NCBI GenBank assembly: GCA_965112155.1 | Contig: OZ218112.1 | Strand: one strand, 5' to 3' | Length of the DNA: 64,000 nt | From: Podarcis liolepis | Taxonomy: Eukaryota | Shown: in pieces, positions 6,840 through 64,000 of the stretch | Layout of the letters: every line of letters starts with the position of its first letter | How positions within the stretch are numbered: the first letter of the stretch is position 1 | The notes under the pieces: generated by a model | What the model was told of the DNA's origin: nothing | The model's input: the letters and a program-made list of their open reading frames with translations, nothing else | Databases searched by the model: none | Program-made: the position numbers and the translations under genes

Positions 6840-8056
6840 CAATAAATCAATCACCCTACCTGCAATTTCCAGCAATTGGTATTCAGAGGAACCCTGCCTC
6901 TACCGATAGAGGTGCCATCATGCTAGCAGCCATTGATGGCCTTTTCCTTCATGAATTTGTCCAATACTCTTTTAAAGCCTTTCACAGTTAACAGTCTTTG
7001 CCTCAAATGTCTCCGTTCCCAGGAGCAAGGATCTTACAGACCTTATTTAGCTAAATGGTAGAGCATAGCACTGCAGGTTCAATCCCAGGCATCTCCAGGT
7101 GCAGCTAGGACACACTCCTGCCTAAAACCCTGGATAGCCACTACCAGTCAGTATAGGCAGTTCTGAGCCCATGTAGAACTCTGACTGAATATGAGGCAGC
7201 TTCTTATGTTCCTAATGTTCCACTCAGAGTGGTTTTCCACCTGTGTTCTAGGCAGACACCACAAAATAATAGTACTATACAGATAATTCCTTTGCCTTCG
7301 GACAGGGCTTCCCAGGATGTTAGAGCAGTCAAAACAACAGGTGCTCACAGGAGAAATCTAGGATGCTACAGTACTGTACCTGTGATTTGGTAGCAGCGTA
7401 TCCCAACCACCAACTGCCACCACCTCTTCTGTGCTGCAAACTATGGTTTGAATTCACATGAGACAACACTCAAACCCACAGGCTGAGCCAGTGTCCTTGG
7501 TAAACCAAGTGTGGCACATCCCAGAATCCTCTGCAGCACACAATGGTTTGAGCTGATGTGGGGCCAGGAAGCAGAAAGATATGAGATGAATTTATTCATT
7601 CATTACATTATATATCATTATATATCAGTAGCTCATGGCAATGTGTAAGGGTCTCACCATCCACATTTTATCCTCAAAGCCTCAACCCTGGGAAGTAGGT
7701 TATGCTGAAAACCCAGGCAACTTCATAGCCAAGTACGTTTGAACCTGGGACTCCTTGGTCTTAGTGTGACACTTGAACCCACTATACCATTATTCAGAAC
7801 ACAAATATTTTATGTCTTAAGGGTAGCGATGGAGGAGAGACTTGGTTTGGTTTGCATTTTAATGTGAACCTTCCTAATTCCCACTTCCATAAATAATCCA
7901 CAAACCAAAGCACAGCTATCCTTCTTAATCCACGCCTCACTGGATTTTGCAATGTAGTAGTCCAACAAAAAATGTTATGAAAAATGTGTATGAAAGTGCT
8001 GGTTCGTTTTTGTGAGGACATTTTTGCTGAATTTTCAAACATTTTTCCTCCCACAG

Positions 8057-8255
8057 GAGAAAAGCCATCAACAAGAGCAAAGAGTCTGTATTCTCGGAGA
8101 ACGAGCGTGAGGCTGTGAAGTACCTGTCGGCAACACAGGTGAACGATGCCGTCCAGGAACAGTATGTTCTCCTGCCAGTCGATCCCACCCTGGAGTGCCA
8201 CAGCCCACCTCCTGACTACAACTCAGTCATTCAGTACTCTGCTCCTCCAGTGTAA
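8057..8255 (+). CDS. kdrl: Terminal coding exon of a VEGF receptor tyrosine kinase, most likely kdr-like (VEGFR4); upstream exons not seen in window
   Basis: Acceptor tttttcctcccacAG ends at 8056, then a phase-2 G. Frame 8058-8255 reads [65 protein letters not shown]. The [11 protein letters not shown].PP end resembles FLT1-type C-termini, and KSKESV plus LLP.[14 protein letters not shown] match fish Kdrl as I recall it. Adjacency of kdrl and cdx4 is known synteny. Confidence 0.88.
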
Positions 8256-22647: not shown

Positions 22648-24045
22648 ATTTTATTTATATCCCGCCCTTCCCAGCCGAAGCCGGGCTCAGGGCGGCTAAC
22701 AACAATCAAATAATCCAACATTCTAAAAACATTTCATTATAAAAATTAATTAAAATCAAATTGATGGCAACCGTTAAGCAGAATTCTGTGCAGATTGCCA
22801 GAGGAGGGAGTCAGGCTGCGCCCTGACCAAAGGCCAGATGGAACAGCTCTGTCTTGCAGGCCCTGTGGAAAGTTGTCAGGTCCCGCAGGGCCCTAGTCTC
22901 TTGTGACAGAGCGTTCCATCAGATTGGAGCTGCATCCGAGAAAGCCCTGGCTCTAGTTGAGGCCAGCCTAACCTCTCTGTGGCCTGGGACCTTCAGGGTG
23001 TTTTTATTTGCAGACCGTAAGTTCCTCTGTGGGACATACCAGGAGAGGCGGTCCTGTAGGTACAAGGGTCCTTGGCCGTATAGGGCTTTAAAGGTTAAAA
23101 CCAGCACCTTAAACCTGATCCTGTACTCCACCGGGAGCCAGTGCAGCTGGTATAGTACCGGGTGAATGTGATCTCGCAGCAAAGACCCCATAAAGAGTCT
23201 CACCGCGGCATTCTGCACCCGCTGGAGTTTCTGGGTCAGTCTCAAGGGCAGCCCCACGTAGAGCGAGTTACAATAATCCAGTCTGGAGGTGACCGTCGCG
23301 TGGATCACAGTGGCTAGGTCAGGGCGAGAGAGATAAGGAGCCAACTGCTTAGCTTGGCGGAGATGAAAAAATGCCGCCTTTGTTATAGCTGTAATCTACG
23401 CCTCCATAGAGAGGGAGGTATTGAAGATTACACCCAAACTCTTAACGGACGGTGCTGGCACTAATTGCACCCCCGCAAGAGATGGGAGTTGCCCCCTCAA
23501 TCCCATATCGTCCCGTCCCAGCCAGAGGACCTCTGTCTTCGAAGGATTTAACTTCAACTGGCTCCCACGTAACCATCCAGCCACAGCTTCCAGACATCTG
23601 GTCAGTGTGTCTGGGGCCGAGTCAGGATGGCCATCCATCAACAGTTAGAGTTGGGTGTCATCGGCATACTGATGGCAACCCAGCCCAAAATTTCGGACAA
23701 GCTGGGCGAGGGGGTGCATAAAGATGTTAAAAAGCATCGGGGAGAGTATAGCACCCTGAAGCACTCCACACACCAAGGAGTGGCACGATGACAATTCCCC
23801 CCCAAGCGCCACCCTCTGTCCCCGACCAGAGAGAAACGAGCGCAGCCATTGAAGGACTGTGCCCTGGATCCCCACGTCAGCAAGGCGGTGGTCCAGGAGT
23901 TCGTGATCGACCATGTCGAAGGCTGCTGACAGGTCTAGAAGAATCAGCAGCCCCGACCCGCCTCGATCCAGCTGCCTGCAGGGTGACCAGAGCCGTCACG
24001 GTCCCATGACCAGCGCGGAAGCCGGACTGGAATGGATCCAAAGCC
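22567..24045 (-). mobile_element. L2/CR1-clade LINE 3' fragment with degraded reverse transcriptase and (TAA)n/(TAAA)n tail
   Basis: Minus-strand ORFs with DPFQSGFR, GVLQGAILSPMLFNIFM, YADDTQL, LKLNPSKTE and SRLDYCNSLY motifs; frameshifts between them. Confidence 0.93.
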
Positions 24046-32495: not shown

Positions 32496-32745
32496 GCCAT
32501 CTCTCCCAGAGTGTTGCTTGAGGTGACTATTTCAGAAAGGCTCGTGGTAGTGCTGGCCCTGGAAACTCCTATGGGTTTCAGGATCATCTGAATGAAGACT
32601 TAGCTATTTGTCCAGGTAAACAAAATGTAAGAAGAGCTCAACTAGGCCAAGTCAAAGGAGCATCTAGTCCAACATCCTGTTCTCAAAGTAGCCAGTCAGA
32701 TACCTTTTCTGGAAATCCTACAAGCAGGACTTGAGCACAATAGTA

Positions 32746-32987
32746 CAGTGGTACCTCAGGTTAAGTACTTAATTCATTCCAGAGGTCTGTTCTTAACCTG
32801 AAACTGTTCTTAACCTGAAGCACCACTTTAGCTAATGGGGCCTCCTGCTGCTGCCACGCTGCCGGAGCACGATTTCTGTACTCATCCTGAAGCAAAGTTC
32901 TTAACTTGAAGCACTATTTCTGGGTTAGCGGAGTCTGTAACCTGAAGCGTATGTAACCTAAAGTAAATGTAACCTGATGTACCACTG
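32746..32987. mobile_element. Tc1/mariner (Tigger-like) MITE, same family
   Basis: CAGTGGTAC TIRs with TA TSD; nested in a CR1-type 3' fragment (~32625-33180). Confidence 0.9.
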
Positions 32988-33334
32988 TACACTCCCCACT
33001 TGTGACTCCCAGCAACAGATTGCCTCGGACAGTAGAAGTAGAATATAACCATAATGGCTAGTAGTCATTAACAGCCTCTCTCCATGAACTTGCCAGATTG
33101 TCTTTTTGACTTGTTCAAATTAGTGGTCATCATTACATCTTGTGGTAGCAAATTCCATAGTTTAACTATGCACTGTGTGAAGAATATATACATAACAATT
33201 TCCTCACACCATGCCAATGTCTTCCACTGGTAGGGACAGGAAAGCGTTCAGCATAATATTATAAGGACACCAGTCTGAAAGAGCACAGGATGTTTTTACA
33301 ACCTTTGCAGATGTATCATGAAGATTCTCCCGAC

Positions 33335-35336: not shown

Positions 35337-36074
35337 CATACATAAATACCTACATACATCATTTTATTTGTATGCCGCCTTTCCACAATATAAACAATGT
35401 TCAAGGTGGCTTTCAAAGTGAAAAAAGTTATACAATTCAAAACACAGCAAAAGTTGTCATAAACAGTAAATAAAACATCAAAAAGTGCACAATCAAATGG
35501 AACAATTTTCCACATACATCATAATAAAGATTCAAAATAAAGATACAAAAATTTAATATCAATAACAGCAACAACCCTCAGCTCAACAAAAGCCCCTAAG
35601 CAATATCCCAGCCCAAGAGTTGTCCAAAAAAATGAACTTGCTTATCAGATGGCCTTATTCAAATCTCCAGTATATTTCAGTGGAAGCTTTCCTACCGTGT
35701 AGTCTAAGCATTGTATTGTGGCATACATAACCTTTCACAGAAAAGAATCCACTTTGTCTGATGCCAGAGGTTGTACAGTCGACAACAGGTTGTGCCAAAA
35801 TAAAGCAGTTGATTTTAAGATGCTACAAGACTCTCCTTGACTCTTTTTGCTGCAACTGACAAAACAAATTCTAGAGGGACAGATGTGTTAGTCTGACACA
35901 GCAAGTGCATACATAACTCATTTGTGATGGAATAAGATACTTGTTGTTCTTATTTATTTTATTTTTGCATAAATAAATAAGTGTGTGGAATCTGTGCCCT
36001 CTCTGTCTGGGGATTTGGGAAACCAGTAGGTCAGGACATGGAGCATCTGTGAGAAAGGAAGCACCCAAATTGGC

Positions 36075-36359
36075 AGCAAGGTGGGGTTGTTGGGATGGCT
36101 AACCCTTCATTTGAATGCAAATGTTGCTTGAGAGCAGCCAGTTATGTGTGACATCAGATAGAACCTTAGTAAACTGTTGGCCCAGCACCTGGTAATACTA
36201 TTGTTAATCATGTGTAGTAAAGAGACCTCAGGGCTAGCATGAGTCATTCATAGAGCCAGTTGGGGCTAGAAAAAGAGAGTGAGAGAAAGAGGAGGGGGTG
36301 TGACATCAAAGGAGTAGAAGCAGGATGCCTTGGCAGGACAAAGCTAGGGTATGAGCATC
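36075..36359 (+). promoter_or_regulatory. cdx4 proximal promoter / 5' UTR with octamer and TCF/LEF sites
   Basis: ATGCAAAT octamer at 36115-36122, ACATCAAAGG TCF/LEF consensus at 36303-36312, adjacent T-box-like GGGTGTGA at 36296-36303. Blocks of this region are also retained in the downstream duplicate. Confidence 0.6.
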
Positions 36360-36816
36360 ATGTATGTGAGTTATCTTTTGGAAAAAGAAGGCAGCATGTA
36401 TCCAGGATCCGTAAGGTGCAACAGCAGCAGCAGCAGCAACAACAACAACAACAACCTGCCGGCACAAAACTTTGCCTCCACAACACCCTACGCAGATTAC
36501 ATGGGATACCATCCAATGCAAAATATAGACCACCGTGGACAACCTTCAGGGGCTTGGGGAGCACATTATGGCCTGCAAAGGGAAGACTGGAATGCTTATG
36601 GCCCAGCACCTTCCAACACTGTGACCGCTACGCAAATGAATGGATCATCTCCCGGGCAGGTTTCCTATAGTTCTGCTGATTACAACTCCTTGAATCCCGC
36701 TGGATCGGGGGCTTTACCTTCTGTAAATACAATCAATACAGAGCAAATCTCTCCCCACAGTCAAAGACACAGCTCTTACGAATGGATGAGGAAAACAGTC
36801 CAATCCACTTCAACAG
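36360..36816 (+). CDS. cdx4: cdx4 exon 1 (N-terminal activation domain and hexapeptide)
   Basis: Starts MYVSYLLEKE, the Cdx family N-terminus; an in-frame upstream ATG lies at 36351. Contains REDWNAY and SYEWMRK. Ends at ACA G|gtatgt, a phase-1 donor at 36817. Confidence 0.96.
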
Positions 36817-39800
36817 GTATGTTGGCGAGGACTAACCTATACACGGAAATCTCTAGCATTATTCTGTGCCATCTCACCCACACACCTCTGCAAGGGAATA
36901 CAAAACTCTTGCTCAAGATGAAAAAGATTGCTTCCCTAGACGTTGTCTATGCTTTTGTACAAATTTGATTTATTGTCCTTCTGACATCCATGAAAGATCA
37001 AATATAATGAAATAATCACCACATGCAATGTGCAGAAACGGGTTTTAGGGAGCGGGATAAGAGAATTTTTAATTGAAAGTGAACTGGGGTAATATCCATC
37101 TAAGTCATACTTAAAGAGATTCACTGAAATAAATGGACTTAAAGTGAATGATTTCAATGGGGGCACTCTGAGCATGACTTACGTTAATTGATTTCAATGG
37201 GTCTACTTTGAGTATGGTTTAGTTTGTTATTACCCAAAGCCTTTTAAATGAGATAATCCGGCAAATATTTTTTAAAAAATATTCAACATAACCTTATGCC
37301 TGTTTATAGGAATTAAGTCTTACTCCCATATAGGACAACAGACTGAAACACGCTGTTTTGGTAGCACTGTAATTGAATATATGGCTCATTTAAAAGTAAG
37401 CTTCTCACATTTTCTACACACTTGTATGACTGAAAAACTAAAATGGTCTTGAAGAGGAAAGGTATATTCACATAAAGCTTCACATCTTCTGAGTTCTACA
37501 TGAGAGGGAGGTCTGCAGCATCACACCATGGTTATATGTTCAATTTATAGGGTTTCATGCATTAACACTTCAAATGGAAACAGTAGATGAAAGGTCATCC
37601 TTCACTTTAAAATGCTAGGCATGCTCAGAGGCTGCAGGGATCTAACACACACAACCAGCTTGATCTTTTCATAGGAGTTTCAATAGTAAGCTGGTGAAAT
37701 AAAAATTGTATAAAATATATCTCGGAGCTCCAGGAAAATATTTGTTAGATAATGGACTAGAATAAAGGTGTTGGCGGGGTGTGTGTGTGAGGAGGCAACT
37801 GCCAGATTACTAAACACTCAGTAATTATACTACTATGGACAATGAAGAACAAAATTCTGGTTTTAAAGTGCTGCATTAAAAAGAGAATCCACACAGCTAC
37901 TGTGTGGTTTGACCGCGGCTATTAAGAGACCGTGGAAGTTAATTGCTGCAATACCTGGTGCTCCATAACATAATGCATAATGCCAGGATCCCAAAATGAT
38001 CCAGGCACACTTTTGCAGGCAATCCTTCAAAGAACAATAGTGCTATTAAGGGGGGGGGGTGTTAAGTACTGCAAAACTTAAATGTATTTAGCTTTCAATT
38101 GAATCCTTTGGTTATGAAAACAGTAGCATAAACATATTACTCCTTGCTGATTATGTAAAGTACAGGAAACTCTGATCAGTGATTTGAACATCTAAGAGCT
38201 CAACTGTGATATTATGGCTTTCTGTTAATCAAGCCTCATGGAATGCTGGGGCACGTAAATCTCAAGGGGTTAATCAATGGTTTAAATTATTTCTTCCAAG
38301 TGAAGGATTGTGGTAAAGTATCTCTCTAAAAACAGGCTACTGGAAAGGTCTCTATTGAAATAACTTTCAAATAACTTTCTACATTGCTTTTGAGGCCTCT
38401 TCTTATTATATCCCACCTTCCGTCAAAGGAACTCATGGGTTCCCTTCTCATTCTATCCTCACAAAAACCTTGTGAAGGAGGCCAGGCTGAGAGGCAATAA
38501 CCAGCTGAGTGAGGATTTGAACCCTTATCTCCCCGAACACTCTAACCGCCACACCGACTTTTAAAAATGCTGCTATGTAAGTACCTAGAGTTGCTGTTCT
38601 TAGGTTTCAGCACAGTCCCCCTCTCTGGAAGTTCAGTCTCTGAGACTCAAATCCTACACATGCTGAAGGTTGCAATCTTAACTCCATTTACCTAGGAAGA
38701 CCTCTGAATTAATATGATTTGCTTATGAGTAGACATGATTAGGATTGCACTGTTAGCCACATTTGAAACAGGGTGGAATTTTACTTACAAGCAAACATGC
38801 ACAGAATATTGCTGCATGGCTCCTTGTCAGTGCCCAGCCTACACATACAATAGAACAATTAGATCTGTCTGATATATCTAACCAGACACAACAAAGAAAG
38901 TTACAGATAGGTAGCCGTGTTGGTCTGCAAAGAAAGAAAGAAACAACAAAGAAAGTAAGTCTTCATACAGCACACGGCTAAACTGTGGAATTTGCTCCAA
39001 TAATGTGATGGCCACCAGATCAATAACTATGTTCTACTTCCAGTGTCAGAGACAGTATGTCCCAATACCAGGTGCTGGGATTCACATGTGGTGAGAGTTG
39101 CTGTTGCTTGCTGGCTTCCCATAGGCATCTGATTGGCCACTGTGAGAACAGGATGCTGAATGAGGCAGGCCTTTGGCCTAATGCAGTTTTCTTCTTATAT
39201 TTTGATGTTAACAAAAATAACAAATTCCAGAGGGGTAGCTGTTTTAGTCTGTGGCAACAAAAATAACAAGGAGTCTCGTGGCGCCTTCAAGATAAATAAA
39301 CACTTCCTGTCTCACAATGCAAAACCAGATTGGTAGACAATTCTAACTAAAATTAAACACACCATGCTAGAGCCCTTTAGAACCTAACAAATTAATAATA
39401 TAAGAACTGTCCTGTAAACAGGAACCGATTGAGCTGCCTGGTCCAACATTCTGTCTTCTGCAGTAGCCAACAAGATGTCATGAACATTTCATGAACAGTG
39501 CACAACAAAGCAGTGCTTGTTTGCTTCCAGAAATTGGGACAGCTGATAGAACCTGCCCTAAGGTTATTTGGCAGCAAAGTCCTTATTCAAATGCCCTTTT
39601 TGGATGCTATACTCTCTACCATCAGGAGTATCAGCAGCTCTTCTTTGTACAGAATCCAAGTGGCCAACAATTAAGGCAAGAACACTCAGTTAAAGCATAT
39701 TTTAAAAATTGTTACTATTGAGCATTTTTCCTCCACTGTGCTATACGGAATTAGGTGATAACTAACTCTGGAAAGCAGCTTGTCAATTTTTTTAGATTAT

Positions 39801-49336: not shown

Positions 49337-49478
49337 NNNNNNNNNNNNNNNNNNNNNNNNNNNNNNNNNNNNNNNNNNNNNNNNNNNNNNNNNNNNNNNN
49401 NNNNNNNNNNNNNNNNNNNNNNNNNNNNNNNNNNNNNNNNNNNNNNNNNNNNNNNNNNNNNNNNNNNNNNNNNNNNNN
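49337..49478. other. Assembly gap (142 N) in cdx4 intron 1
   Basis: Run of N. Confidence 1.
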
Positions 49479-49964: not shown

Positions 49965-50110
49965 GTAAAACAAGAACAAGAGAGAAGTACCGTGTTGTTT
50001 ACACAGATCATCAGCGATTAGAACTAGAGAAGGAATTTCATTACAATAGATATATTACAATCAGGAGAAAGTCTGAACTTGCTGCAAACCTGAGACTTTC
50101 AGAGAGACAG
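49965..50110 (+). CDS. cdx4: cdx4 exon 2 (homeodomain, N-terminal part)
   Basis: Polypyrimidine tract and acAG acceptor at 49964. The 146 bp exon reads (G)[48 protein letters not shown], with donor gtagag at 50111. Phase matches exon 1. EKY, YNRY and KSELA..L.LSERQ are Cdx4-type residues. Confidence 0.97.
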
Positions 50111-51671: not shown

Positions 51672-51926
51672 GTAAAAATCTGGTTCCAGAACCGAAGAGC
51701 CAAAGAAAGAAAATTAATGAAGAAGAAAATGACAAGTTTTGATGGCAGCAGCCTCAGTTCCATCCAGAGTGACTCAGGTTCAATGAGTCCCATCCCAATG
51801 CCTGACCCACAGACTCATTCAGAAATGGCTGGTACTTTATTCCCACCACCTCCACCACCTGCTCCTCTTCCAATGAATGGCTTACAGCACAATGGAAATC
51901 TCCAGCAAGTTGTGGCATCTCAGTAA
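51672..51926 (+). CDS. cdx4: cdx4 exon 3 (homeodomain helix 3 and C-terminus)
   Basis: Acceptor ttgcccttgtAG, then VKIWFQNRRAKERKLMKKKMTSFDGSSLSSIQSDSGSMSP...LFPPPPPPAPLPMNG...QQVVASQ*. Spliced CDS is 858 nt, 285 aa. Confidence 0.97.
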   Translation, partial: VKIWFQNRRAKERKLMKKKMTSFDGSSLSSIQSDSGSMSPIPMPDPQTHSEMAGTLFPPPPPPAPLPMNGLQHNGNLQQVVASQ

Positions 51927-53461
51927 GGTCATTGCGTTAAAGGAAGAACATGATAAAGCATGGGTACATGGAGCACTACAGTTCACAACGGGAATGTCAA
52001 AGCTGTTTGCAAGAGACCCAACTCTGCAGCCCCAGCATCACAACAGCCATTTGTAAAATACTGAGAACTTCACATCACATCAAGGCCTGGGAGAAAACAG
52101 CAAAACATCCTTTGGCAAGGTCACTTGTGATATGGCAAAATCTCTTTGGGAACCTTGTGTTCTTGACTGCAAAGGTGGTCTGGAAATAGGGGCAGAGAGA
52201 AAGGGGGTTATGGCCGGAAAAACTTTTTTGGAATAAATGCCCCAAATCTGCAGCCCCATACTTTGCTTGATTTGAGACTGAATAATTTTTACACAGAGCA
52301 ATTCCAGTAATTTGTTCTTTCTATAATGTTTTTATTCTGTTCTCTTAACAGGGTGGAGCTAATGACAATTACAAGGAAATGAAGGGTTACACTGAGTCAG
52401 TGTAGCTTGTTGTCAGGACTGGGCATATGCTGTGTTTCTGCAGAAGTACAGGAAAAGTAGACAGTGCAGTATTAGGCACAAAATTCAGCTTCCTAAGAAC
52501 AACTTTCATTTTAAACAGAAGTTTCTAGTCCTTATGGCTAAAAAGTTATGCCTGAAGGTGCACAGGCAATGCCTGATAAAATTTCAGAACCTAGACACAT
52601 AGCTAAGAAAGATTTCCAGTACTTGAGGGCAAACTCCTTGTTCCTTGCCATGACCAGCAATAAATTTTGCAAAATAAGGACACTGTGCAAATTTGCTGAG
52701 TTTGCACAATGGCTTGTCCAAATGCAGATGTTGCTTTTTAGTGTGGAGGTTACACACCAGCCAACTTTTTGCTGATTGGATGTTTCAGATGTAAAGTTTT
52801 CGGATGTTTGAATCCATGGGGAAATTGGGGGGGGGGATAGGTTTGCCATTAAATTATTGTGTTTGGTACAGTATATTAAAAGTTAATAATTTTGGGTTAA
52901 TAATTACAAATCGAATTTACTTCTTAATTATTATTTTTTAATTACAAATGGAGCTACAACTGCTGAACTGTAATCAACCTAGCATTCCCCCCCCCCCCAT
53001 TTTTCCAGTTTATAAGGAAAAGGTGGAACCTCCCCACTCCCAGGAACAGGAGAAACCACCAACATTATAGTAAACGAAAATGTTTGTGTAATCTGAAAAT
53101 TATTAAAGTCCTATTCAGAGTAGACCCACTGAAAGTAATGTAGCTAAGTTAGTATTGGGTCTACCATGAGCAGGGTTAGCACTGACTACCACCCTGTGTC
53201 TCCTACAGTCCTCCACAATGTGAAGCAGACATAAAGCATTCATATCCATAAACAGAAACTGTGACAAAGCAAGGAGGGATATTACATGAATTTTAATCAA
53301 CCTCTTTTTCTGAGCCACCACAATCAGTTTCTGTTTCTTCATATTTGTTATTATATTTATCATGGACTTCTAAAAGCTTAAGGTTTGCCCAGGTTGAAAC
53401 AAACTTATCTATCCTTTCACATGTCGTGGGGAAGGGAAAGGTTTGGAGGAAGGGTAGAAGA

Positions 53462-53467
53462 AATAAA
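53462..53467 (+). terminator. Candidate cdx4 polyadenylation signal
   Basis: AATAAA followed by a U/GU-rich tract; an alternative AATAAA lies at 52232-52237. Confidence 0.3.
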
Positions 53468-54150
53468 ACTGTTTTGTTTTATTTTTTTTCCTGGGTCTTC
53501 ACATCTCTAACCTGAAGCCATGAAATAAGTTTGATGGCACATCACCAGCTTCTGTTCCATTCCATTGTTTAATTCAAGATTCCTGTGGTTTTAATTTTGT
53601 ACTTATTTCATATCTGCACGGGAGCTTATGATTTCATGTCTTGATATTCTCAACTAAATGACATCAGGGTTGCTCTGGACACCAGAATTAATAGAGAAGG
53701 GGAGGTACTCTTCAAGTTCTGGTTTTTAAATTATTAACTAAAATCTACTTCTAAAATTCAGTTGAACAGGAGAGACTCTTGTGCAAAAAGGGGTTGCACA
53801 TACCTAGTTGTATGCACCTAGATTCAGCAGCTGCCAAAAGGAGGTAAGGATGTGTATTTCCAATGAGAAGCCACATTTCCATCCATACTTCGCAGTACTA
53901 AATGTGATACTCATCTGCACCTAATCTGCACTCACAAAAGCTGAGTTCAGATTATCAGTTTTAAACTATGGCTTAGATCAGGGATGAGGAACCTGTGGTT
54001 TTCAGATGTTGCGAGGTTTCAACCTTCATCATCCCTGACCATTGAGCATGCTGGCTGGGACTCATGGGAGCTGGATTCCAACAACACCTGGAGGGTCACA
54101 TGTTCTCTATCCTGGTTTGGAGGGAAATTAGCTGCAGTGAGATTCCAGTA

Positions 54151-54261
54151 CAGTAGTACCTCGGGTTAAGAACTTAATTCGTTCTGGAGGTCTGTTCTTA
54201 ACATGAAACTGTTCTTAACCTGAAGCACCACTTTAGCTAATGGGGCCTCCTGCTGCCGCTG
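54151..54261. mobile_element. Truncated copy of the Tigger-like MITE
   Basis: One TIR end plus internal sequence shared with 32746-32987. Confidence 0.8.
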
Positions 54262-54490
54262 TTTTAAATTAGTATTTGAAACGGGGCAGTGTGTTGGAAG
54301 CTGCATGTTCAGTTCTCAGTTTAATATTAAAAATATAAGAGCTTGACTGCTGAATCAGACCAAAAGCCTGTCTAGTCTATCACTGTGTTATCACAGCAGC
54401 CAACAAGATGCCATGGGAAAACTGCAAGCTAGAGTACAACCCCCCCCCCCTTTCCCTACCTGTGATCCACTGACCCAATTGTGGGGTGAT

Positions 54491-54730
54491 CACTGGTGGA
54501 AGAAGAGGGGGGCGAGGGAGCGCCCTGCCCCCGGCAGTGCGATCCCAGTGGGGTTCCATTCCGGCTGCTCCCCTGCCCGCGCTGGGCACCCCACCCCCAC
54601 AGGCGGTGCGCCCTGCCTCCAGAACATGCGCCATGCTCCTGTGGGAGGCGCATCCCACCCCCAGGACATGCGCCAGCCCCGCCCTGCCTGCTCTCCGCCC
54701 CCAGTGCCAGAGCACAAAGCTCCGCCACTG
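54491..54730. mobile_element. GC-rich hAT-like MITE
   Basis: CACTGGTGGA / TCCGCCACTG ends; degenerate TSD GGGGTGAT / GGGGTACT. Confidence 0.65.
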
Positions 54731-56617
54731 GGGGTACTCTGTCAGTAACCAGGACAAGGACATAGTGCCAGGCTCCTAGTAGCTGTAGAAGGCCTGGCAG
54801 TACCAAAGGCCTGCTGCCACTTAATCTCAGGGTCTGATGTTGAATGCTACTATTTCTTTCTGTATCTGAAAAGGGTTCTGTGACTTGAGTGCACCTAATC
54901 CCTGGTACCTGCCTCAGACCATGAGTTCCCACTTCAAGCCTTGACATATCCCAATATTCAAGAACCATACATCCCTCATATCACGATTCATTTGAGACAT
55001 CATGCCAAACTATGGTTTGCACTATCATTTGGAAACTTAACCAGGATTTGTGTGCTAAATGTAGACCATACAATGTTATAACCTGTTAGTGTAATCCTAT
55101 AAATAGTATCTGTCTACCGAAGAAAAATCATGGCTCAGGGCTGTAGGTGTGCTTTCACATTCTGTCTGCTCAGCTTCAAAAATTTACTCCCCACTCGTAG
55201 TGCAGCAGCTTCTGGACAAAACTGTGTCTTGCCATTTCAGACGCCACACAGAAGCAAAAGCACTGCCTACAGAGAAATGCTATACTCGTGGCCACTTTCA
55301 TGTCGCCTTGGAAGAAACACATAATCAAATAAGAGGGCACAGATTTGCATGTTCTGATTTACATGTATAGATGCAAATTAATAAATAATTATAATTTCAA
55401 ATAGAACTCTGGCGCATATTTCCATAGTAGGAAAGAGTGTAACCAGGTGATCTGTGTTCCTGCTCAGCTGTAGTCTAAGCCTTGCATTCCTTTCTAATGG
55501 TATCTTTAAACAGATACATTATTTTATCCCCTGGAGTTAATAGTTTTATGGTGTTATCTCTCTTTATATGCACTCCTTTACCTCAAAATGCGATAAGGCT
55601 CTCTTGCTGCATTTGAGGGCCCTCCTGCTCATTCTGCTGAGTGGGGTCCTGTACCTCTGCCCCAAAATCTGGCCCAGATGGCACCACTGACCAAACATGG
55701 ATTGGATAACCCCTTGAAACTGTCCTCTATAAAGTATGAAACACGAGGACCCTATAAGCACCATTACATTCAATGGAATTTACTAAATAGGTATAGGATT
55801 GCAGCCTCAAGCTTTCTTCACCATGGTTTTGACATGTTATCTTAATTGAACCTAAGTTAACTGCATGTATTTGATTTGTTAAGATGTTACAGAGGAAAAT
55901 CCTTAAATTTGATATACAAGAGCAGATGAAATCAATTGCAAATTTACCAAAGTCTGCCAAAACGTTTGACTTACAATATTTGCACAGATTTCTATGCAGG
56001 TTGTTGATGGAAGAAGCTTACCCTGTTTGCATCCAAAGCCATCTTCAAAAAGTCATAGGTTGAGGTCCAAACTAGAACGCCACATACTTACCTGTATCTT
56101 TCTGTTATGCTTCAAACAAAACAAAAAAACAAAAAAACAAAAAAAACGCACGAGAAGTTTCAAGTTTAAATGGAGGAATAATGCAGGAATGGGCTGCTTA
56201 ACCTTTTTCTCCTCTAGCTATTTTTATTGTTAGAAGCACATTGCTCTGGGACAAAGGCAGCTTGAGGAGAGCAATTATGAGGAGAAAAGTTAGCAGAGAG
56301 GAAAGAATTAAACAGCTGGGGTCCAACCCAATAGCCCAGTCCACTCCAACAAGAGATTATTCTTTTTTATTAAAACATTATTATTTTTTACAATAATGGG
56401 GGCAAACCACCAAAAACTATCACATGTCGGGCCACCCAGATTGGTGATTTTTCTGCAGGTGTATTCTGCAATATGTCATTGACACAGCAAAAGTGCATTA
56501 AGGGTAGATTTATATTGGACTGTCCACATCTCATTCTGCTTTATTAGTTGATGTTTCCCATTATTGCTATCTGGAGTGCACTCTTAAACTGTAATGCAAC
56601 TTACCGGTAGGTTTGAC

Positions 56618-56744
56618 CAGTGCTCTTTTAGGGTACTCAAGGGTACTCAGTACCAGCACCTCTTTTGTTGTTAAAAAGTGTGACACTTACTGTAACAAGT
56701 TCATGGTGAGTACTGGCACCTATTTTTCTAGGAAAAAAGCACTG
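56618..56744. mobile_element. hAT MITE (CAGTGCT family)
   Basis: TIRs; TSD GGTTTGAC / AGTTTGAC. Confidence 0.82.
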
Positions 56745-58323
56745 AGTTTGACAAAAGATTTGTGGTATAAAAAGTTACCAGATTTCAGTAGGAAGTTACA
56801 GGACACACACTGATTGGAAATGAAGCCGTATATTGGCCCCAAAACTTTTGCAGACACCAACAGTATTGAAAGCTAGTTTGAATATAACTATCCCATTACC
56901 ATCATGAGCACAAATAATCATGAATGCATAATAAAAAGGACATATGGAAGGGTTCCAAGTCTGGCCCTGTGTGTCGTTTTCAGAAATATTAACTACTGAA
57001 GGGTGAAAGGAACAGGAGACAAAGCAAATAATTCACCTCCTGAGTGGGTCAGTGGAAAGTGCTAAATATGTTCATTTTTACATTACTCTGTTATCCAGTT
57101 TTGAAAGTTGTTTTGAAGCTCAAAGACTCTTGATTGTCTTAGGCAGTAACAATGGGTTCCACCTTCTAAAAAAACTAAACAAACATTATAACAGACCTTA
57201 AAGTTGCTTTATATACACAATTTTTAACAAACCATCCTTTGTTGATGTGGTGCCCTCCAGATGTTTTGGACTCCCATCAGCTTCAGCCAGCATGGAATGG
57301 CAAAGGTTGCAATAAATGATGCAGATGTTTTCATTGTAGTGTGGTGTAAGCTACTACAGGAAATGTCAAGGCACAAATGCTTTTGCTGTTATTCCTTTTG
57401 ATCATAAGTAAAAGTACAAAAAACAAAACCCTACAATAAATACACTAACTGATCATATTAAAATGTAGGCAAGAAAATTATTCTTTTATATCTCAGTTCA
57501 AATATGAAAAGAAGTGATATTGAACAGCCCATGCAATATCAAATTGCCATCAATTTACATTGGTATCAATGAACAAAGCAAGGATTATGTTGCATTTATC
57601 CTCCTAAACATATTTGAAAAGTCCTTAGAAATTCCATGGTGGCCATTAAAGGAAGAGAAACTTACACTTCCTGGTGTGAAAATTTGGGACGTCAAAACAA
57701 AAACAGCACTTTAGTCACTTGTTCCAGGATCACTGCAGGGTTAGTTTATCTGGTAAACCTTGTTTACATACAGGAGATAATTATGAAGGAAGATAAGGAA
57801 AGGCTTTGAAGACATATTTTAATCTAATTTGCTAAAATGTTGCTTACTTTTGATTGCAATATGTTTTCATTAGATGCAGCTAGTATGTAACATAAAGCAG
57901 AGTTTTTAATAAGGCAGTACCCAAAAGCTAAAATCAGAACTGAAAAGTTTAAATCAGTAGATTTAAGAACAAAAAGACAACTTTTTTGGAGCTGTTATAC
58001 CTCAAGAGCACAGTTGTTTATATAGTTTTCAAGCCACTTGTAGCCCTAGTTTATTACTGCATTACAGAATGCGTAAGGAAATGATAAAGACGGTCCTTCT
58101 AACAATGAGCCTTTATTAATCAAGTTGCAAGTTATTTCACTCAGTAGCACAAAAAGCAGTATCTCATGGGGGAAAATGCAGTTATATTTGAACTCAATAT
58201 ATTAATTGGTTAAAAGGTAGATTAATAACTAAAATATGTCTAATCTATTGACAGCCCTAATTAAAATATATTGCTATAAAATTGAACAATGCCTTAATTA
58301 TCATTAGCCTAGTAGTTATATAG

Positions 58324-59010
58324 TGTTATGAGTTTGTGGGTGCCAGGTTCCTCTGAATCCCTGGAACCAGTAAGTGTTAGAATTTAATTAAATACTGCTA
58401 ATTTCAGAAAACTACCAGACAACTACAATCCCCGGATCCAGCAAAGTATTAGAATCTAATTAAGGTTTGGGGTGCTAAGAGGTGTACTAGCCATCTCTAA
58501 TCCTTGGATCACCAAGTGTTAAAAGATAATTAAGCTCAGCTAGTTTCCTTTTGAGGTGATAGGCAGGTTATGGGCCATTCAGAAAACATGGGCTCCAAGG
58601 GACTTAGTGAGACAGCCAAATGGTTGGGGCCCCTCCAGCAACTGATAAATCCAGAGTTTAAAATAAAGAGTTAGAAACAATGTGAGTTAGAAGTTTAGGG
58701 TAGAGGCAGTAATGTGACCTAGAAGTAAAGTAGGAACAGGAGAGTCAGAGCAATTTTCTGAGAGCGAGGTTTGAGAGCTTATTTGCATTCAAGGCTTTGG
58801 CTGTGAGAAAAGCAAGGCCTGCTTGGAGTGTTAATGCTGTGAACACCTTCACTGGAGGCTCAGGTTGTATATATGTGTAAATACACTATATATCCTACGA
58901 ATACCACAGTCTCTGATGTGCCACATTTCCAAAAGGAAATACGGACCCTGAGTGAGAGACTGAAACCCCTGGAATCTTACATAGCTCAAAGACAGGAGTA
59001 GCATACAACA
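58324..59010 (+). mobile_element. Probable solo LTR (Gypsy-like)
   Basis: TGTTATG...CATACAACA termini; 4-bp flanks ATAG/ACAG; internal short repeats and a degenerate polyA-like U5 region. Confidence 0.5.
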
Positions 59011-59553
59011 ACAGTGATTCTTTAACATCAATTTTACTCATTTGAAACCATGCAGGAAGTATGATTCAGTAAGCATTTTGTTAACTGTAACAAAGAAAAA
59101 GCTATTTTATGCAATAAATGTTTGTAAAATACATTTGTACAAGTGGAAAGCCAGAATATTTGCAGGTGTTTTTTACTTTGCAGCACTTTGTTTCCTTTCC
59201 CCCATTTGCACACATCCTTTCATAAACAAAGAGAACTGGAGCAGCAGCCAGAGTGGCCAGAGTGTTTGTACAAGAGTGGTCATTTTGTTGACTGAAATTC
59301 TTGCATTTCCTATGGAGAAAGAGATGGACCAGGGATCAGAGAAACTGTTGGTGTGTGGGGAAAGAATGTATGTCCACCAGCCTGCCTTCCAGACATCTTT
59401 GGTCCCTGAATTTGGGAAAGAAGCCAATTATTCCTTATGCCCTCAACATTTCTTTCCTGAGTGCCAAACCTTCTTTCTTCCATGGAACAGAAGGCTTGAC
59501 CAAGACATTTCGGTGGCTGAAATATCTAAACAACAATTATCCCATCTGTTAAT

Positions 59554-60015
59554 GTTGTTGTTGTTGTTTAGTCATTTAGTCATGTCCGACTCTTCATGAC
59601 TCCATGGACCAGAGCACGCCAGGCACTCCTGTCTTCCACTGCCTCCCGCAGTTTGGTCAGACTCATGTTTGTAGCTTCCAGAACACTGTCTAACCATCTC
59701 ATCCTCTGTCGTCCCCTTCTCCTTCTGCCCTCCTTCTGTGCTCCTTCTGCCCTCAGTCTTTCATCTTTTTCATCAGACCCTCATCAGGGTCTTTTCCAGG
59801 GAGTCTTCTCTTCTCATGAGGTGGCCAAAGTATTGGAGCCTCAGCTTCACGATCTGGCCTTCCAGTGAGCACTCAGGGCTGATTTCCTTAAGAATGGATA
59901 CGTTTGATCTTCTTGCAGTCCATGGGACTCTCAAGAGTCTCCTCCAGCACCATAATTCAAAAGTATCAATTCTTCGGCGATCAGCCTTCTTTATGGTCCA
60001 GCTCTCACTTCCATA
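59554..60015 (-). mobile_element. RTE-BovB LINE 3' fragment
   Basis: ORF YGSESWTIKKADRRRIDTFELWCWRRLLRVPWTARRSN; (CAA)n tail; perfect 11-bp direct repeat CATCTGTTAAT at 59543-59553 and 60016-60026. Confidence 0.93.
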
Positions 60016-60424
60016 CATCTGTTAATATAGGGCACAATACATCATGAAAAATTCCTGCACATGCTCTATTGCAATAATCAGAAACTACTGTACTCTTATG
60101 CAGTTTATTTCATTTCAATAAGGATTGTGCAGGAACTGATGGTGGATTGTGAGTGACAAGTCACTGGCCACTTCATTTTGCCTTTCCTTTCCAAACCTGG
60201 TATCCTTCTGATGTTTTGGGGAACAGCCATGCAAGCTAGGGTTGATATAAGTCATAGTTCAAAATATCTGGAAGGGCAGCTTTTCCTGCATTTAGGTGAG
60301 GTTCCTGGGTGTACCAGCGCCAGCTTCCATGCTGTTAGGTACCATCTATAGGTAAGTTTCAGAATGAGTTCTCTTTTCTGTGTTTGTTTGTTTTGTAACA
60401 CAAGAAAATCTTTAATAAAAACTA

Positions 60425-60666
60425 CAGTGGTACCTCAGGTTAAGTACTTAATTCATTCTGGAAGTCTGTTCTTAACCTGAAACTGTTCTTAACCTGAAGC
60501 ACCACTTAAGCTAATGGTGCCTCTTGCTGCTGCTGCGCCGCCACTGCACGATTTCTGTTCTCATCCTGAAGCAAAGTTCTTAACCCAAGGTAATATTTCT
60601 GGGTTAGCAGAGTCTGTAACCTGAAGTATATGTAAGCTGAAGCATATGTAACCCGAGGTACCACTG
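60425..60666. mobile_element. Tc1/mariner (Tigger-like) MITE, same family
   Basis: CAGTGGTACCTC TIRs with TA TSD; followed by (AAC)n. Confidence 0.9.
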
Positions 60667-60667
60667 T

Positions 60668-60721
<54 letters not shown>
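60668..60721. repeat. (AAC)n microsatellite
   Basis: Directly visible. Confidence 0.95.
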
Positions 60722-60722
<1 letters not shown>

Positions 60723-61549
60723 CATCTGGAGGGAAACCAGGTTGGAGAAGGTTACCTTACAGTTTGGAGCCGTCTCTGTTCCCAACTAATCCCCAGATAC
60801 TGACTGAAATGTCCATTTCTTGCTTAATGCTATCAAAATCTGAACATATGACCAAGGAAATGAAACAAGTGAAGGAGTGAGGAACCTTTTCTATCCCAAG
60901 ACTACATTGCCTGCTAGACAATCTTCTGAGGATGACATGTTGTTTGTGGGCAGGGCCAGAGGCAAAGTGGGAAGAACAACAGTTGTGAATTTTACCCTTG
61001 TACAGTAGCATCTACACCAGCTCCCACACCCCTCTCCATCTTTCATCCAGGAAACAAGAGTCATGGTCAGAGTTCAAGGGCACATTCCAGACAGGCAAAA
61101 ACACTCATAGAGGGTACATGGCAGGGCTAGTGAGGATGTGTGGCCTGTGGAGACTTCTCAGGGCTAGATATGGGTCCTGGAGAGTCACATTTTGTCATTG
61201 TGCCTAAATTTCCCCACTTCTGAAAATGAGAGTTAAACTTTCCGCTACTAGATACTGAACTTTCCTTCACCTTCACTTGTTAGAGAAACTCTCTTGCTTG
61301 CCTTTTACCCATCTCTCTGATGGTCACAGCTTCCCTCTTTCCTGGAATTAGTATGGATGTACTAGTCTGAATGGTGTCAAGGTGTAAAGAGCTCTGAAAG
61401 AATCCACCTATCTGAGAAGCTAAAGGTCTCATAATACGTCACATCTCTTTTGCAAGGACATCCTTTGACAAATACCTTAGTGTTTAGTTATATATCATGT
61501 AGGATTTTATTTTTATTTTTTAAATGTAAACAAAGAGAGCAAGACAGAG

Positions 61550-61823
61550 CTAGCAGAAAGGTGGGGTTGCTTGGATGCGTCAGCTCTTCATTTGAATGGA
61601 CATGCACTTAGAGAATTGGCAGACCTTTTCCTAAACCATGACTACCAGAAGCTTGGTAACACAATGACTGGTAACACAATGACTGTTAATTCAAAATAGA
61701 GTAATAGATTCAATCAGATTGTGATGTGTTCCAAAGACCAGCAATAACTTATATTTCACCTTATATAAGAAGAGAGTAACCAACAAGCAGGATGTCAAAA
61801 AAAATCCACCAGTCAATGATGTC
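61550..61823 (+). promoter_or_regulatory. Duplicated, degenerate copy of the cdx4 proximal promoter
   Basis: Blocks shared in the same order with 36075-36330: aaggtggggttg, cttcatttgaatg, tggtaa...tgttaat, aagagagt, aagcaggatg. Confidence 0.75.
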
Positions 61824-62248
61824 ACGTATGTAAGCCATCTTTTGGAAAAAGAAACCAGGATCCCTAAGGAGCAACAATAACCATCTAACAACACAAAACT
61901 CTGCCTCCACAGCACCACATACAGATTGCATGGCTTATTGTCATCTGCCAAGTATGGAAAACCATGGACTGGTAAACCGGTCTTTGGGGAGCTGGGGTTC
62001 TCATGATGACCCAGAAAGGGAAGATTGGCATTCTTACGACCAAGGACCCTCCAGGACAGATACTTGTTTACAAATGAATTCCTTATCTCCTAAAAGGGTT
62101 TCATACAGTGCTGCTAATCACAGCTCCCAAATCTTCTGTGCCTTCACCTTCTGTTACACAATTAATATGGATCAAGTCTCTCCCCATAGTCAAAGACAAA
62201 ACTCATCTTATGAATGGATGAGAAAATGCATGTACTCTACTAATAAAG
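61824..62248 (+). pseudogene. Diverged tandem duplicate of cdx4 exon 1 (cdx4-like pseudo-exon or truncated paralog)
   Basis: ACG TAT GTA AGC CAT CTT TTG GAA AAA GAA reads (M>T)YVSHLLEKE. After a net 11-nt deletion the frame from 61855 reads PGSLRSNNN...QNSAST...MAY...GSWGSH...REDWHSY...QMN..SP..VSYS...SPHSQRQNSSYEWMRK, colinear with cdx4 exon 1. The donor position reads AAAG|ATAAGT. Confidence 0.92.
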
Positions 62249-64000
62249 ATAAGTGGACACTATTATATTTCCAACCTCGTAATCTGCCCCCCCCCCCAAT
62301 CTTTTCTTCTCTAGTAGAACTCTTGGCATGATCCAGCTGAAGTTTCAAATCCCACACATATCTATTCCTCATTCCTCTCACAGAGTGAAAGTGCACTAAG
62401 CAAGTGCTTAACTTTCCTACTGAAATCAGTGGAGCTTAAAACTTCTTAACTCTTTGCTGGAACCTTTATTTAGGAATGAAACTTCTGTGCTTATGCAAAT
62501 TAAATCTACATAATTTCAGCTTCTAAAGGCTGAAATCTTGGTAGCTTGAAATAACTTCACCTTCGCAAAGTTGCAAGTTTCAAAGTTTTATACATTTGTT
62601 TAGGTTTGAAAGATGTTGAATCTATAGCACTTTGCAGCATGAGCCAGAGTATTATGAAAAAAATCTATTTTTCTTAATAGCATCTCTTTTTTTTACATTA
62701 GAATACAGTCTTTCCAATAAAGTTATCCTATGATATTCTTAATGTATGAAAAAATATTCATTATGAGAGCTTTTTTTTTTTGCTGCCCCCAAATGTTTAG
62801 TAGACTGATACAGCTGGGCTAAGTTTCATGATGCTCTGATGTTTAAGGAGTCTCACCTCATATTAACATGTTTAAACTAAAAAGCATGCATTGGGTGCTA
62901 TCCAGCATTAGTCATACCCAATGGATCAGCTCTATGACTTATCTAGGTATCACTCAGTAAGTACAATAAATTACTGACTTAGATGCAAATGAAAAGCATG
63001 TCTGCCTTCTGTAAGAAGTGCCTTAAGATCATTTGCCATAATTTGTAATTTTCCCCATTATAGTGTCCTGTTTATTTAATAAATGACTTATTGCTTTACA
63101 GAAGACTTTTTGCCATCTGTTTTAAAAATATATTCCTGAAGGCCCATATTAAAGCAGAAAGGGTTGTTGTGGTTGTTTTAATGGAAACCTGTAAGCCAGA
63201 TTTAACCTCTTCTTTGTGTATGTTGAATTTAAGAATAATGGACCATTGGCAATTCTAGCAAGGTTAACAGCAAGGATAGAATTAAGCTGAAGTTACGCAC
63301 TTTTTCATGCTGATTAATTTCAGTGGCAGAGTTCAGCACATGCTTAAATATCTCCCATTAAAACTTTTGAGACTTAAAGGTGCTTGAGTTTGGCAAAATT
63401 GTGCCTGAAGTGTGCCACTGAGCACCAAGGAGAAGAAGGGTAATTACAGTAGACTAATCCTACAAGATGCTAAACCCATCAATTTAGCTTGTAAAACAAC
63501 TCTGCTACTAATGGCTACTATCATTCAACGCTGAGATTCATTTGGTGATTGTTCTTGTTCCAAAACATTCGTACTTCTCGTTACTACTTTTGCTTAAAAA
63601 AATTAGGAGGCAATACAGATTCAAGTGAGTCTAATTCCAGGTTCTTAAAAATGCCTGTAAATAAAAGATAAAAATAAATAGTATAAAACATAAGCCAAAT
63701 ACTATTGTGCTTGCATGGTTAAGACTGAAGATAGGATACTGAACTTGGACCTGGCAGAACTGGTTCACATCAGTTGTGGCACCCCAAGGAGACTTGTTTA
63801 ATTTAACGTATTTTTAGTCCCAGGCAAACACTGATATTTCCAAACAACTATTGAGATTTTAATATCTATGGAATTTTAAATACTTGATATTTTTGTGTAA
63901 AGCTTTTTATTATTATTTCATTTTACAATGTATATAAAAGAGAGAGCAATTATAACAGACAAAAATTAAAAGAAGAAAAACAAAACTATACAACAGGCAT

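What the first reader, a model, noticed from the sequence alone, without database searches (positions are those of the whole stretch)
61550..62254. Hidden tandem duplicate of cdx4 (promoter plus exon 1) 10 kb downstream of the intact gene
Seen: a same-strand copy colinear with 36075-36822 over promoter, 5' UTR, all of exon 1 and the donor site. This indicates a DNA-level duplication, not a retrocopy. Three lesions are visible: ATG>ACG (61824-61826), a net 11-nt deletion after LLEKE (~61854) and donor GT>AT (AAAG|ATAAGT, 62249). Established: tetrapods normally have three Cdx genes, one per ParaHox paralogon. Inference: this is the relic or 5' end of a fourth, tandem Cdx gene. Its homeobox exons could lie beyond the window, and it may be intact in related lizards.
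Basis: partly seen in the sequence, partly recalled or inferred. Interest (0 to 1): 0.9.

Follow-up and report, generated by a model that had tools for sequence, protein, structure and literature searches.

The report
Decayed second copy of Cdx4's first exon
About 10 kb downstream of an intact lizard Cdx4 gene lies an old, broken duplicate of its promoter block and first exon: a real DNA-level duplication, but by every test available here an ordinary dead pseudogene and not a hidden working fourth Cdx gene.

Summary
Window 61553-62248 is a same-strand, colinear, diverged copy (about 73% DNA identity in the exon) of a promoter block and exon 1 of the intact Cdx4 gene (exons at 36360-36816, 49965-50110 and 51672-51926). 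The copy's translated frame matches Pfam Caudal_act at 90 bits. In a tree it falls inside squamate Cdx4 with 98/98 support.

All three reported lesions are present: ATG>ACG, an 11-nt deletion and donor GT>AT. I found one more: a 20-nt patch (62135-62154) read out of frame between two compensating non-3n deletions.

Contigs from three other samples, carrying three species labels, span the segment at single-copy depth. Two of them demonstrably share the lesions.

The substitution pattern fits mostly neutral decay:
- The time-averaged omega on the copy's branch is about 0.8 (support 0.4-1.5).
- 41% of near-invariant residues have changed.
- Indel density is at a neutral level.
- Within the genus there are 5 nonsynonymous changes to 1 synonymous.

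The 131-codon stop-free frame is mildly unusual under neutrality (P about 0.04).

No second homeobox lies inside the window, and the region beyond 64000 could not be reached. No closer protein and no paper was found.

Verdict: an ancient non-processed Cdx4 pseudogene fragment, of modest interest.

The parts
36073..36123 (+). Parent Cdx4: conserved proximal promoter block
   Evidence: 81% identical over 52 nt to 61553-61604, at a matching distance upstream of the start codon
36360..36816 (+). Parent Cdx4 exon 1 coding part (152 codons plus 1 nt, phase 1; donor GT at 36817)
   Evidence: Pfam Caudal_act 166 bits. Identical over about 105 aa to a UniRef Podarcis muralis protein
49965..50110 (+). 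Parent Cdx4 exon 2 (first part of the homeobox)
   Evidence: Pfam Homeodomain 41 bits, profile positions 2-43 of 57
51672..51926 (+). Parent Cdx4 exon 3 coding part (end of the homeobox, C-terminus, stop codon)
   Evidence: Contains WFQNRR; Homeodomain profile positions 44-57. The three exon lengths sum to 858 nt, i.e. 285 codons plus the stop
61553..61604 (+). Copy: relic of the promoter block
   Evidence: blastn 81% over 52 nt, E 6e-6, colinear. The identity is no higher than neutral decay of one copy predicts
61762..61769 (+). TATATAAG, a TATA-like motif about 55 nt upstream of the former start codon; the parent has no counterpart
   Evidence: Read directly from the sequence. The other three samples have G at 61768. 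Function not tested
61824..62248 (+). Copy of Cdx4 exon 1 (pseudo-exon)
   Evidence: Global DNA alignment gives 302 of 411 aligned bases identical (73.5%), with ten gaps
61824..61826 (+). Former start codon, now ACG (ACA in a second individual of the same species label)
   Evidence: In one search, X4 shows G>A at 61826 and X15 shows no change
61852..61857 (+). Site of the 11-nt frameshifting deletion, which also removes the second conserved Met
   Evidence: It is shared by X4 and X15, because every gap letter of those contigs is accounted for elsewhere
61858..62250 (+). Stop-free frame of 131 codons that follows the ancestral codons
   Evidence: The chance of no stop after neutral decay at d = 0.28 is about 0.04
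62135..62154 (+). Patch read one base out of the ancestral frame, between compensating non-3n deletions (net -9)
   Evidence: 16/20 identity only in the out-of-frame register, against 4-7/20 in other registers.
62249..62250 (+). Former splice donor, now AT
   Evidence: No difference in X4, whose differences are all listed; none listed for X15

Best explanation
This is a non-processed (DNA-duplicated) pseudogene fragment. An old tandem duplication of the Cdx4 locus left a second promoter and exon 1 about 25.5 kb downstream of the parental one, or 9.9 kb past the parental stop codon. That copy has since evolved mostly or wholly without constraint and does nothing as a coding gene today. Shown here: the homology, its Cdx4 origin, the lesions, and the presence of the segment in other samples and species labels. 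Inferred: that the decay was largely neutral, that the age is of the order of 10^8 years, and that the copy has no function. Left open: whether the duplication was partial (dead on arrival) or covered the whole gene, with dead exons 2-3 beyond the window.
For: Homology and colinearity. Cdx4 origin within squamates at 98/98. There are at least five disabling or frame-disturbing changes: the start codon and the second Met are lost, an 11-nt frameshift, an internal pair of compensating frameshifts, and donor GT>AT.

Differences by parental codon position are 30/137, 33/138 and 46/136, and 25/63 at fourfold sites. From these, a profile likelihood puts the copy-branch omega at about 0.75-0.85. Values of omega at or below 0.3 are rejected (dlnL 4 or more) and omega = 1 is not. 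The copy's amino-acid branch of 0.63 is what full neutrality at d about 0.28 predicts. 41% of residues that are at least 90% conserved across 20 sauropsid orthologues have changed.

The copy has about ten gaps in 430 nt, most of them not multiples of three. Within the genus, five of six listed substitutions in the frame are nonsynonymous, including Gly>Asp in the conserved WG. The listed density in the frame (1.27% in X15) is no lower than across the contig as a whole (1.2%).

No closer protein exists in two very large libraries. One RNA run shows zero depth.
Against: The ancestral frame has no stop in 131 codons, where about three are expected. The chance of none is about 0.04 at d = 0.28. 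Pairwise dN/dS is 0.29-0.48 by four methods, somewhat below the roughly 0.55 expected if one branch were fully neutral. Both results would fit an early functional phase of up to roughly half, and at the outer support limit two thirds, of the copy's history.

The hexapeptide region SPHSQR..SSYEWMRK and REDW are well kept. The single RNA run is from an unknown tissue, and only about 12% of it was read, so it says nothing about embryonic expression. Differences found only in organism D were not listed, so that species' state at the lesions is unknown.
Confidence: 0.8

Rival explanations
1. This is the 5' end of a complete second Cdx4-like gene whose homeobox exons lie beyond 64000. That gene worked for a long time and died only recently in this genus, and it may still be intact in other lacertids or squamates.
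For: The frame is stop-free over 131 codons. The key motifs are kept. Pairwise dN/dS is below 0.5. The parental intron 1 is 13 kb, so exon 2 of a full copy would fall near window coordinate 75 kb, outside the data.
Against: The time-averaged omega on the copy's branch is about 0.8, and strong constraint is rejected. There are frameshifts inside the frame. 41% of near-invariant residues are lost. No copy-2-like protein was found among 5.8 billion clusters or 1.84 billion representatives, although length limits and 50% clustering weaken this blank. The lesions are shared by species labels A and E.
Confidence: 0.13
2. The copy is still functional. It would be translated from the ATG at 61930 into a 133-aa homeodomain-less Caudal_act and hexapeptide protein, or it would act as a transcribed regulatory RNA or promoter.
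For: There is an ATG-started ORF at 61930-62331. A TATA-like motif lies at 61762-61769. The YEWMRK motif is kept.
Against: Within the genus there are 5 nonsynonymous changes to 1 synonymous, and divergence equals that of the flanks. The ORF contains an out-of-frame patch. A short upstream ORF, ATGATGTCACGTATGTAA at 61816-61833, precedes it. There were no RNA reads in the one run laid. No similar ORF has been called in any library.
Confidence: 0.04
3. It is an assembly artefact, a misplaced haplotig, or a processed retrocopy.
For: None found. The linkage to the parent gene over 10 kb was not bridged by any contig.
Against: Single contigs of 2.5-3.0 kb at single-copy depth cover 61076-64000 in three other samples from other studies. 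The 27% divergence from the parent excludes a collapsed or duplicated haplotype. A retrocopy is excluded by the promoter block, by the end of similarity at the exon boundary, and by the absence of adjoining exon 2-3 sequence.
Confidence: 0.02

Closest known systems
Cdx4 (caudal-type homeobox 4), the ParaHox gene of the paralogon that lost its Gsx and Xlox genes
   Same: The N-terminal Caudal_act domain covers the full profile and includes REDW and the SSYEWMRK hexapeptide region. A promoter block is shared. The copy sits in the same locus and on the same strand, and it nests within squamate Cdx4 in the tree.
   Different: It has no start codon, a frameshifted 5' end, a broken donor and no homeobox within reach. 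About half of the residues are changed, and its branch is at least six times longer than the parental one from the squamate node.
Non-processed (duplicated) pseudogenes produced by tandem segmental duplication
   Same: It keeps the promoter and the exon boundary, lies in tandem next to its parent, carries several disabling lesions, and shows a near-neutral substitution and indel pattern.
   Different: It is unusually old yet still recognisable (about 0.28 substitutions per site on its branch), and by luck or by an early functional phase it is free of stop codons. Tandem duplicates of Hox or ParaHox genes have rarely been described in vertebrates, and none turned up for Cdx4 in the papers searched.
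Extra Cdx genes of teleosts (cdx1a and cdx1b), which come from whole-genome duplication
   Same: They are another departure from the usual vertebrate set of three Cdx genes (PMC4471637).
   Different: Those are functional ohnologues on separate chromosomes. This one is a local tandem copy and it is dead.

Membership tests
Cdx4 gene (functional member) | N-terminal caudal activation domain (Pfam PF04731) | tested here: met
   90.4 bits against a cut-off of 22.4, profile positions 4-135 of 136, on the frame 61858-62250
Cdx4 gene (functional member) | Groups with Cdx4 and not with other Cdx paralogues | tested here: met
   It falls inside the squamate Cdx4 clade at 98/98, with shark and teleost cdx1b as outgroup. 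All best hits are sauropsid Cdx4. No tetrapod Cdx1 or Cdx2 sequences were in the tree
Cdx4 gene (functional member) | Homeodomain encoded by exons 2 and 3 | tested here: inconclusive
   The window holds no second homeobox. Only 1.75 kb of sequence follows the pseudo-exon, whereas the parental intron 1 is 13 kb
Cdx4 gene (functional member) | Start codon, continuous reading frame and GT donor | tested here: not met
   ACG in place of ATG, an 11-nt deletion, an internal out-of-frame patch, and an AT donor
Cdx4 gene (functional member) | Purifying selection on the protein | tested here: not met
   Copy-branch omega is about 0.8 and omega at or below 0.3 is rejected. Within the genus there are 5 nonsynonymous changes to 1 synonymous. 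Sample sizes are small
Non-processed duplicated pseudogene | Homology extends into the promoter and stops at the exon-intron boundary | tested here: met
   Promoter block at 61553-61604. There is no similarity beyond 62254 apart from repeats
Non-processed duplicated pseudogene | Disabling lesions fixed in the population or across species | tested here: met
   The lesions are shared by a second individual (X4) and by species label E (X15). Organism D could not be read at these sites
Non-processed duplicated pseudogene | No expression | tested here: inconclusive
   One bulk RNA run of a sister species gave zero depth. Its tissue is unknown and only about 12% of its reads were sampled
Processed pseudogene (retrocopy) | Exons joined without introns, no parental promoter, poly-A tail | tested here: not met
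   No exon 2 or 3 sequence adjoins exon 1, and a promoter block is present

The most novel reading that the evidence does not exclude
Early squamates, or the lacertid stem lineage, carried a complete tandem duplicate of Cdx4, a fourth Cdx gene. It functioned for tens of millions of years and survives intact in some living lizard lineage. This window would then show only its dead 5' end.
Probability: 0.1. Interest if true: 0.6.

Novelty: new member of a known kind. Interest (0 to 1): 0.25.

Why it matters
Vertebrates are textbook cases of a fixed set of three Cdx genes inherited from whole-genome duplication, and local duplicates of Hox or ParaHox genes are rare. This relic shows that the Cdx4 locus was tandemly duplicated at least once in squamate history.

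As it stands, this is a correction to the annotation: a pseudo-exon that gene predictors and exon-1 probes could mistake for Cdx4. It is also a potential phylogenetic marker. It would matter for evo-devo questions such as axial elongation and tail development in lizards only if an intact orthologue turns up in another lineage.

Tried and rejected
**Cross-species context.** I tried look-up of encoding contigs on gecko and skink CDX4 proteins.

**Protein searches with the copy's frame.** The 131-aa and 157-aa stop-free references gave no hits. The representative search returned nothing above 49% identity. These blanks are weak for three reasons: the length window of the search, clustering at 50% identity (a full-length paralogue could hide inside a Cdx4 cluster), and the fact that even this genome's own ORF is absent from the library.

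**Divergent gecko and skink proteins.** I asked whether the unusually divergent Eublepharis and Lerista CDX4 proteins might be orthologues of the copy. They are not: they are no closer to the copy (50% and 44%) than canonical proteins are, and Eublepharis groups with the other geckos.

**Dating the duplication by topology.** It is unresolved. AU tests reject neither a lacertid-specific origin (p 0.20) nor an origin before the squamate crown (p 0.29).

**My own intermediate reading, that in-frame indels and an open frame prove long selection.** I dropped it after the DNA-register test showed compensating frameshifts and the codon-position model gave omega near 1.

**Conserved versus variable columns.** The difference goes in the direction expected under constraint but is not significant (p about 0.09-0.10).

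**Other checks.**
- Rfam scan of 34-64 kb: nothing.
- Notes from the scan on the flanking windows: none.
- RNA: zero depth in one run, which is uninformative.

Full report
**1. What is in the window**

The intact gene is a three-exon Cdx4 on the + strand.
- Exon 1 coding part is 36360-36816. It has 152 codons plus one base, and the donor GT is at 36817.
- Exon 2 is 49965-50110.
- Exon 3 coding part is 51672-51926.

The three exon lengths sum to 285 codons plus the stop. The exons match Pfam Caudal_act (166 bits) and the two halves of Homeodomain.

Over its last 105 or so residues, exon 1 is identical to a UniRef Podarcis muralis protein. The genome is therefore a wall lizard or a very close relative. 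An N run at 49337-49478 in intron 1 was left untouched.

**2. The observation**

blastn of 53001-64000 against 1-53000 gives three colinear, same-strand blocks:

| Copy | Parent | Identity |
|---|---|---|
| 61553-61604 | 36073-36123 | 81% |
| 61822-61853 | 36358-36389 | 87.5% |
| 61872-62226 | 36443-36794 | 68%, E 8e-30 |

All other matches in that search are interspersed repeats. A global alignment of the exon gives 302 of 411 identical bases (73.5%) and ten gaps.

The frame 61858-62250 is 46% identical to parental exon 1 (E 2e-31). It covers the whole Caudal_act profile at 90 bits.

- ACG stands at 61824-61826 where the parent has ATG.
- An 11-nt deletion follows LLEKE. It also removes the second conserved Met.
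- The donor reads AAAG|AT at 62249-62250.

The claim of colinearity across the whole promoter and 5' UTR is too generous. Only the 52-nt block and a 10-mer are alike.

**3. An additional lesion**

The 20 nt at 62135-62154 align to 36705-36724 at 16/20, but only in a register one base out of the copy's own open frame. Other registers give 4-7/20. The sequence on either side of the patch is in frame. The flanking deletions (-1, -7 and -1) sum to -9.

The "open frame" therefore contains a compensated frameshift. This is the signature of unconstrained indel accumulation, not of a preserved coding sequence.

**4. Is it real DNA, and is it shared?**

Logan contigs from three other samples were laid on 60800-64000: X4 (same species label, different study), X15 (label E) and X6 (label D). 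Single contigs of 2.5-3.0 kb cover 61076/61082 to 63602/64000 at flat single-copy depth.

- **X4.** All 12 substitutions and 9 gap letters are listed. It has ACA instead of ACG, and no change at the 11-nt deletion or at the donor.
- **X15.** All 28 gap letters are accounted for elsewhere, so it shares the deletion. No change is listed at the start or the donor.
- **X6.** Differences private to X6 were not displayed (27 substitutions and 25 gap letters are hidden). Its state at the lesions is unknown, apart from a 6-nt deletion at 62191.

No contig bridges the 10 kb back to the parent gene. The tandem linkage therefore rests on the assembly.

One bulk RNA run of label D gave zero depth over 61121-64000. 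Its tissue is unknown and only about 12% of its reads were sampled, so this is uninformative.

**5. Which Cdx, and how old?**

A search of 1.84 billion representatives with the copy's frame returned only sauropsid Cdx4 at the top, at 42-49% identity. Nothing closer was found.

I built an ML tree of 24 N-terminal domains under LG+C20+F+G4. It places the copy inside the squamate Cdx4 clade at 98/98, on a long branch of 0.63, with its position inside squamates unresolved. AU tests reject neither a lacertid-specific origin (p 0.20) nor an origin before the squamate crown (p 0.29).

Fourfold sites differ at 25 of 63, a JC distance of 0.565, or about 0.28 per lineage. Labels A and E differ by about 1.2% over this contig. 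If these labels are Podarcis species, the genus crown is dated at about 18.6 Mya (PMC8114931). The duplication is then at least an order of magnitude older than the genus, of the order of 10^8 years. This dating is an inference.

**6. Was it ever under selection?**

Pairwise dN/dS is 0.29-0.48 by four methods. That average includes the strongly constrained parental branch.

I used the DNA alignment and the parental codon positions: differences of 30/137, 33/138 and 46/136, and 25/63 at fourfold sites. I allowed 0.03-0.06 for parental change at positions 1 and 2, taken from the tree. The profile likelihood for the copy's own branch then peaks at omega 0.75-0.85.
- Omega at or below 0.3 is rejected (dlnL 4 or more).
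- Omega = 1 is not rejected.
- The support interval is roughly 0.4-1.5.

Other results agree with largely neutral decay:
- The amino-acid branch of 0.63 equals the neutral expectation for d about 0.28.
- 41% of residues that are at least 90% conserved in 20 sauropsid orthologues have changed.
- Conserved and variable columns differ only weakly (p about 0.09).
- Indel density is in the neutral range, at about ten gaps per 430 nt, mostly not multiples of three.
- Within the genus, five of six substitutions listed in the frame are nonsynonymous, one of them in the invariant WG. The frame is no less diverged than its flanks.

The one observation pointing the other way is the absence of stops in 131 codons. 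Simulated neutral decay from the parental sequence gives about 3 stops, and a chance of no stop of about 0.04 at d = 0.28. An early functional phase would ease this. Its length would be up to roughly half of the copy's history, or two thirds at the outer support limit. The data do not require such a phase.

**7. Conclusion**

This is an ancient, non-processed pseudogene fragment of Cdx4, present in several closely related species.
- It is not a retrocopy. It keeps a promoter block, its similarity ends at the exon boundary, and no exon 2-3 sequence adjoins it.
- It is not an assembly artefact.

The data cannot say whether it is the head of a complete dead duplicate or a partial duplication. The expected position of exon 2 is about 75 kb, outside the window.

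No paper in the searchable library reports a tandem Cdx4 duplicate or pseudogene in reptiles. The standard count of three Cdx genes is restated in PMC4471637.

**8. Other first-stage notes on the same stretch**

Two other notes bear on this stretch.
- One reads the divergence as "synonymous-biased, once functional". This is weakened. The bias is about what one constrained branch plus one neutral branch would give.
- The other reads the stop-free ORF as a "homeodomain-less peptide". This is made unlikely by the internal out-of-frame patch and by the unconstrained pattern within the genus.

**9. Scores**

Interest is low to moderate at 0.25. This is a solid annotation and a possible phylogenetic marker. 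There is a roughly 10% chance that it points to a real fourth Cdx gene in some other squamate lineage.

Noticed in passing
window 8031-8252 (+): A stop-free stretch ends in ...HSPPPDYNSVIQYSAPPV, which from memory resembles the C-terminal tail of a VEGF-receptor (FLT1-like). Pfam gave no match, as expected for a tail.
   Followed up: partly
window 60423-60668, 32744-32989, 30174-29947, 44824-44589, 54147-54259: Copies of one SINE-like repeat family at 80-93% identity, far younger than the Cdx4 duplication. They are not part of the duplicated unit.
   Followed up: partly
window 59773-60018 (-) and 22922-24000 (-): ORF fragments that look like LINE reverse-transcriptase C-termini (for example ...GSESWTIKKADRRRIDTFELWCWRRLLRVPWT...). 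This is ordinary repeat content between the parent gene and the copy.
   Followed up: no
window 61640-61669: A 15-nt tandem duplication (ggtaacacaatgact, twice) in the relic promoter is present in this genome and in X4 but absent from species labels D and E.
   Followed up: partly
window 62191-62196: Species label D (X6) lacks 6 nt inside the stop-free frame. Other differences private to X6 were not displayed, so its state at the lesions is unknown.
   Followed up: no
window 60665-60722: A trinucleotide microsatellite weakly matches the poly-Ser/Asn coding repeat of parental exon 1 (36419-36455). This is low-complexity similarity only.
   Followed up: no
window 54380-54970: A GC-rich island (52.5% against about 39% around it) carries long overlapping ORFs on both strands. 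Its nature was not determined.
   Followed up: no
proteins P0039 (Eublepharis macularius) and P0044 (Lerista edwardsae): The annotated CDX-4 N-termini of these two lizards are unusually divergent (55-65% to other squamates, against 70-85% typically). They are not closer to the pseudo-exon than canonical proteins are.
   Followed up: partly
proteins P0075 and P0076 (Crotalus tigris): There are two separate 'CDX-4-like' RefSeq proteins of 271 aa on different contigs within one 90% cluster. They are probably haplotigs and not a paralogue pair.
   Followed up: no
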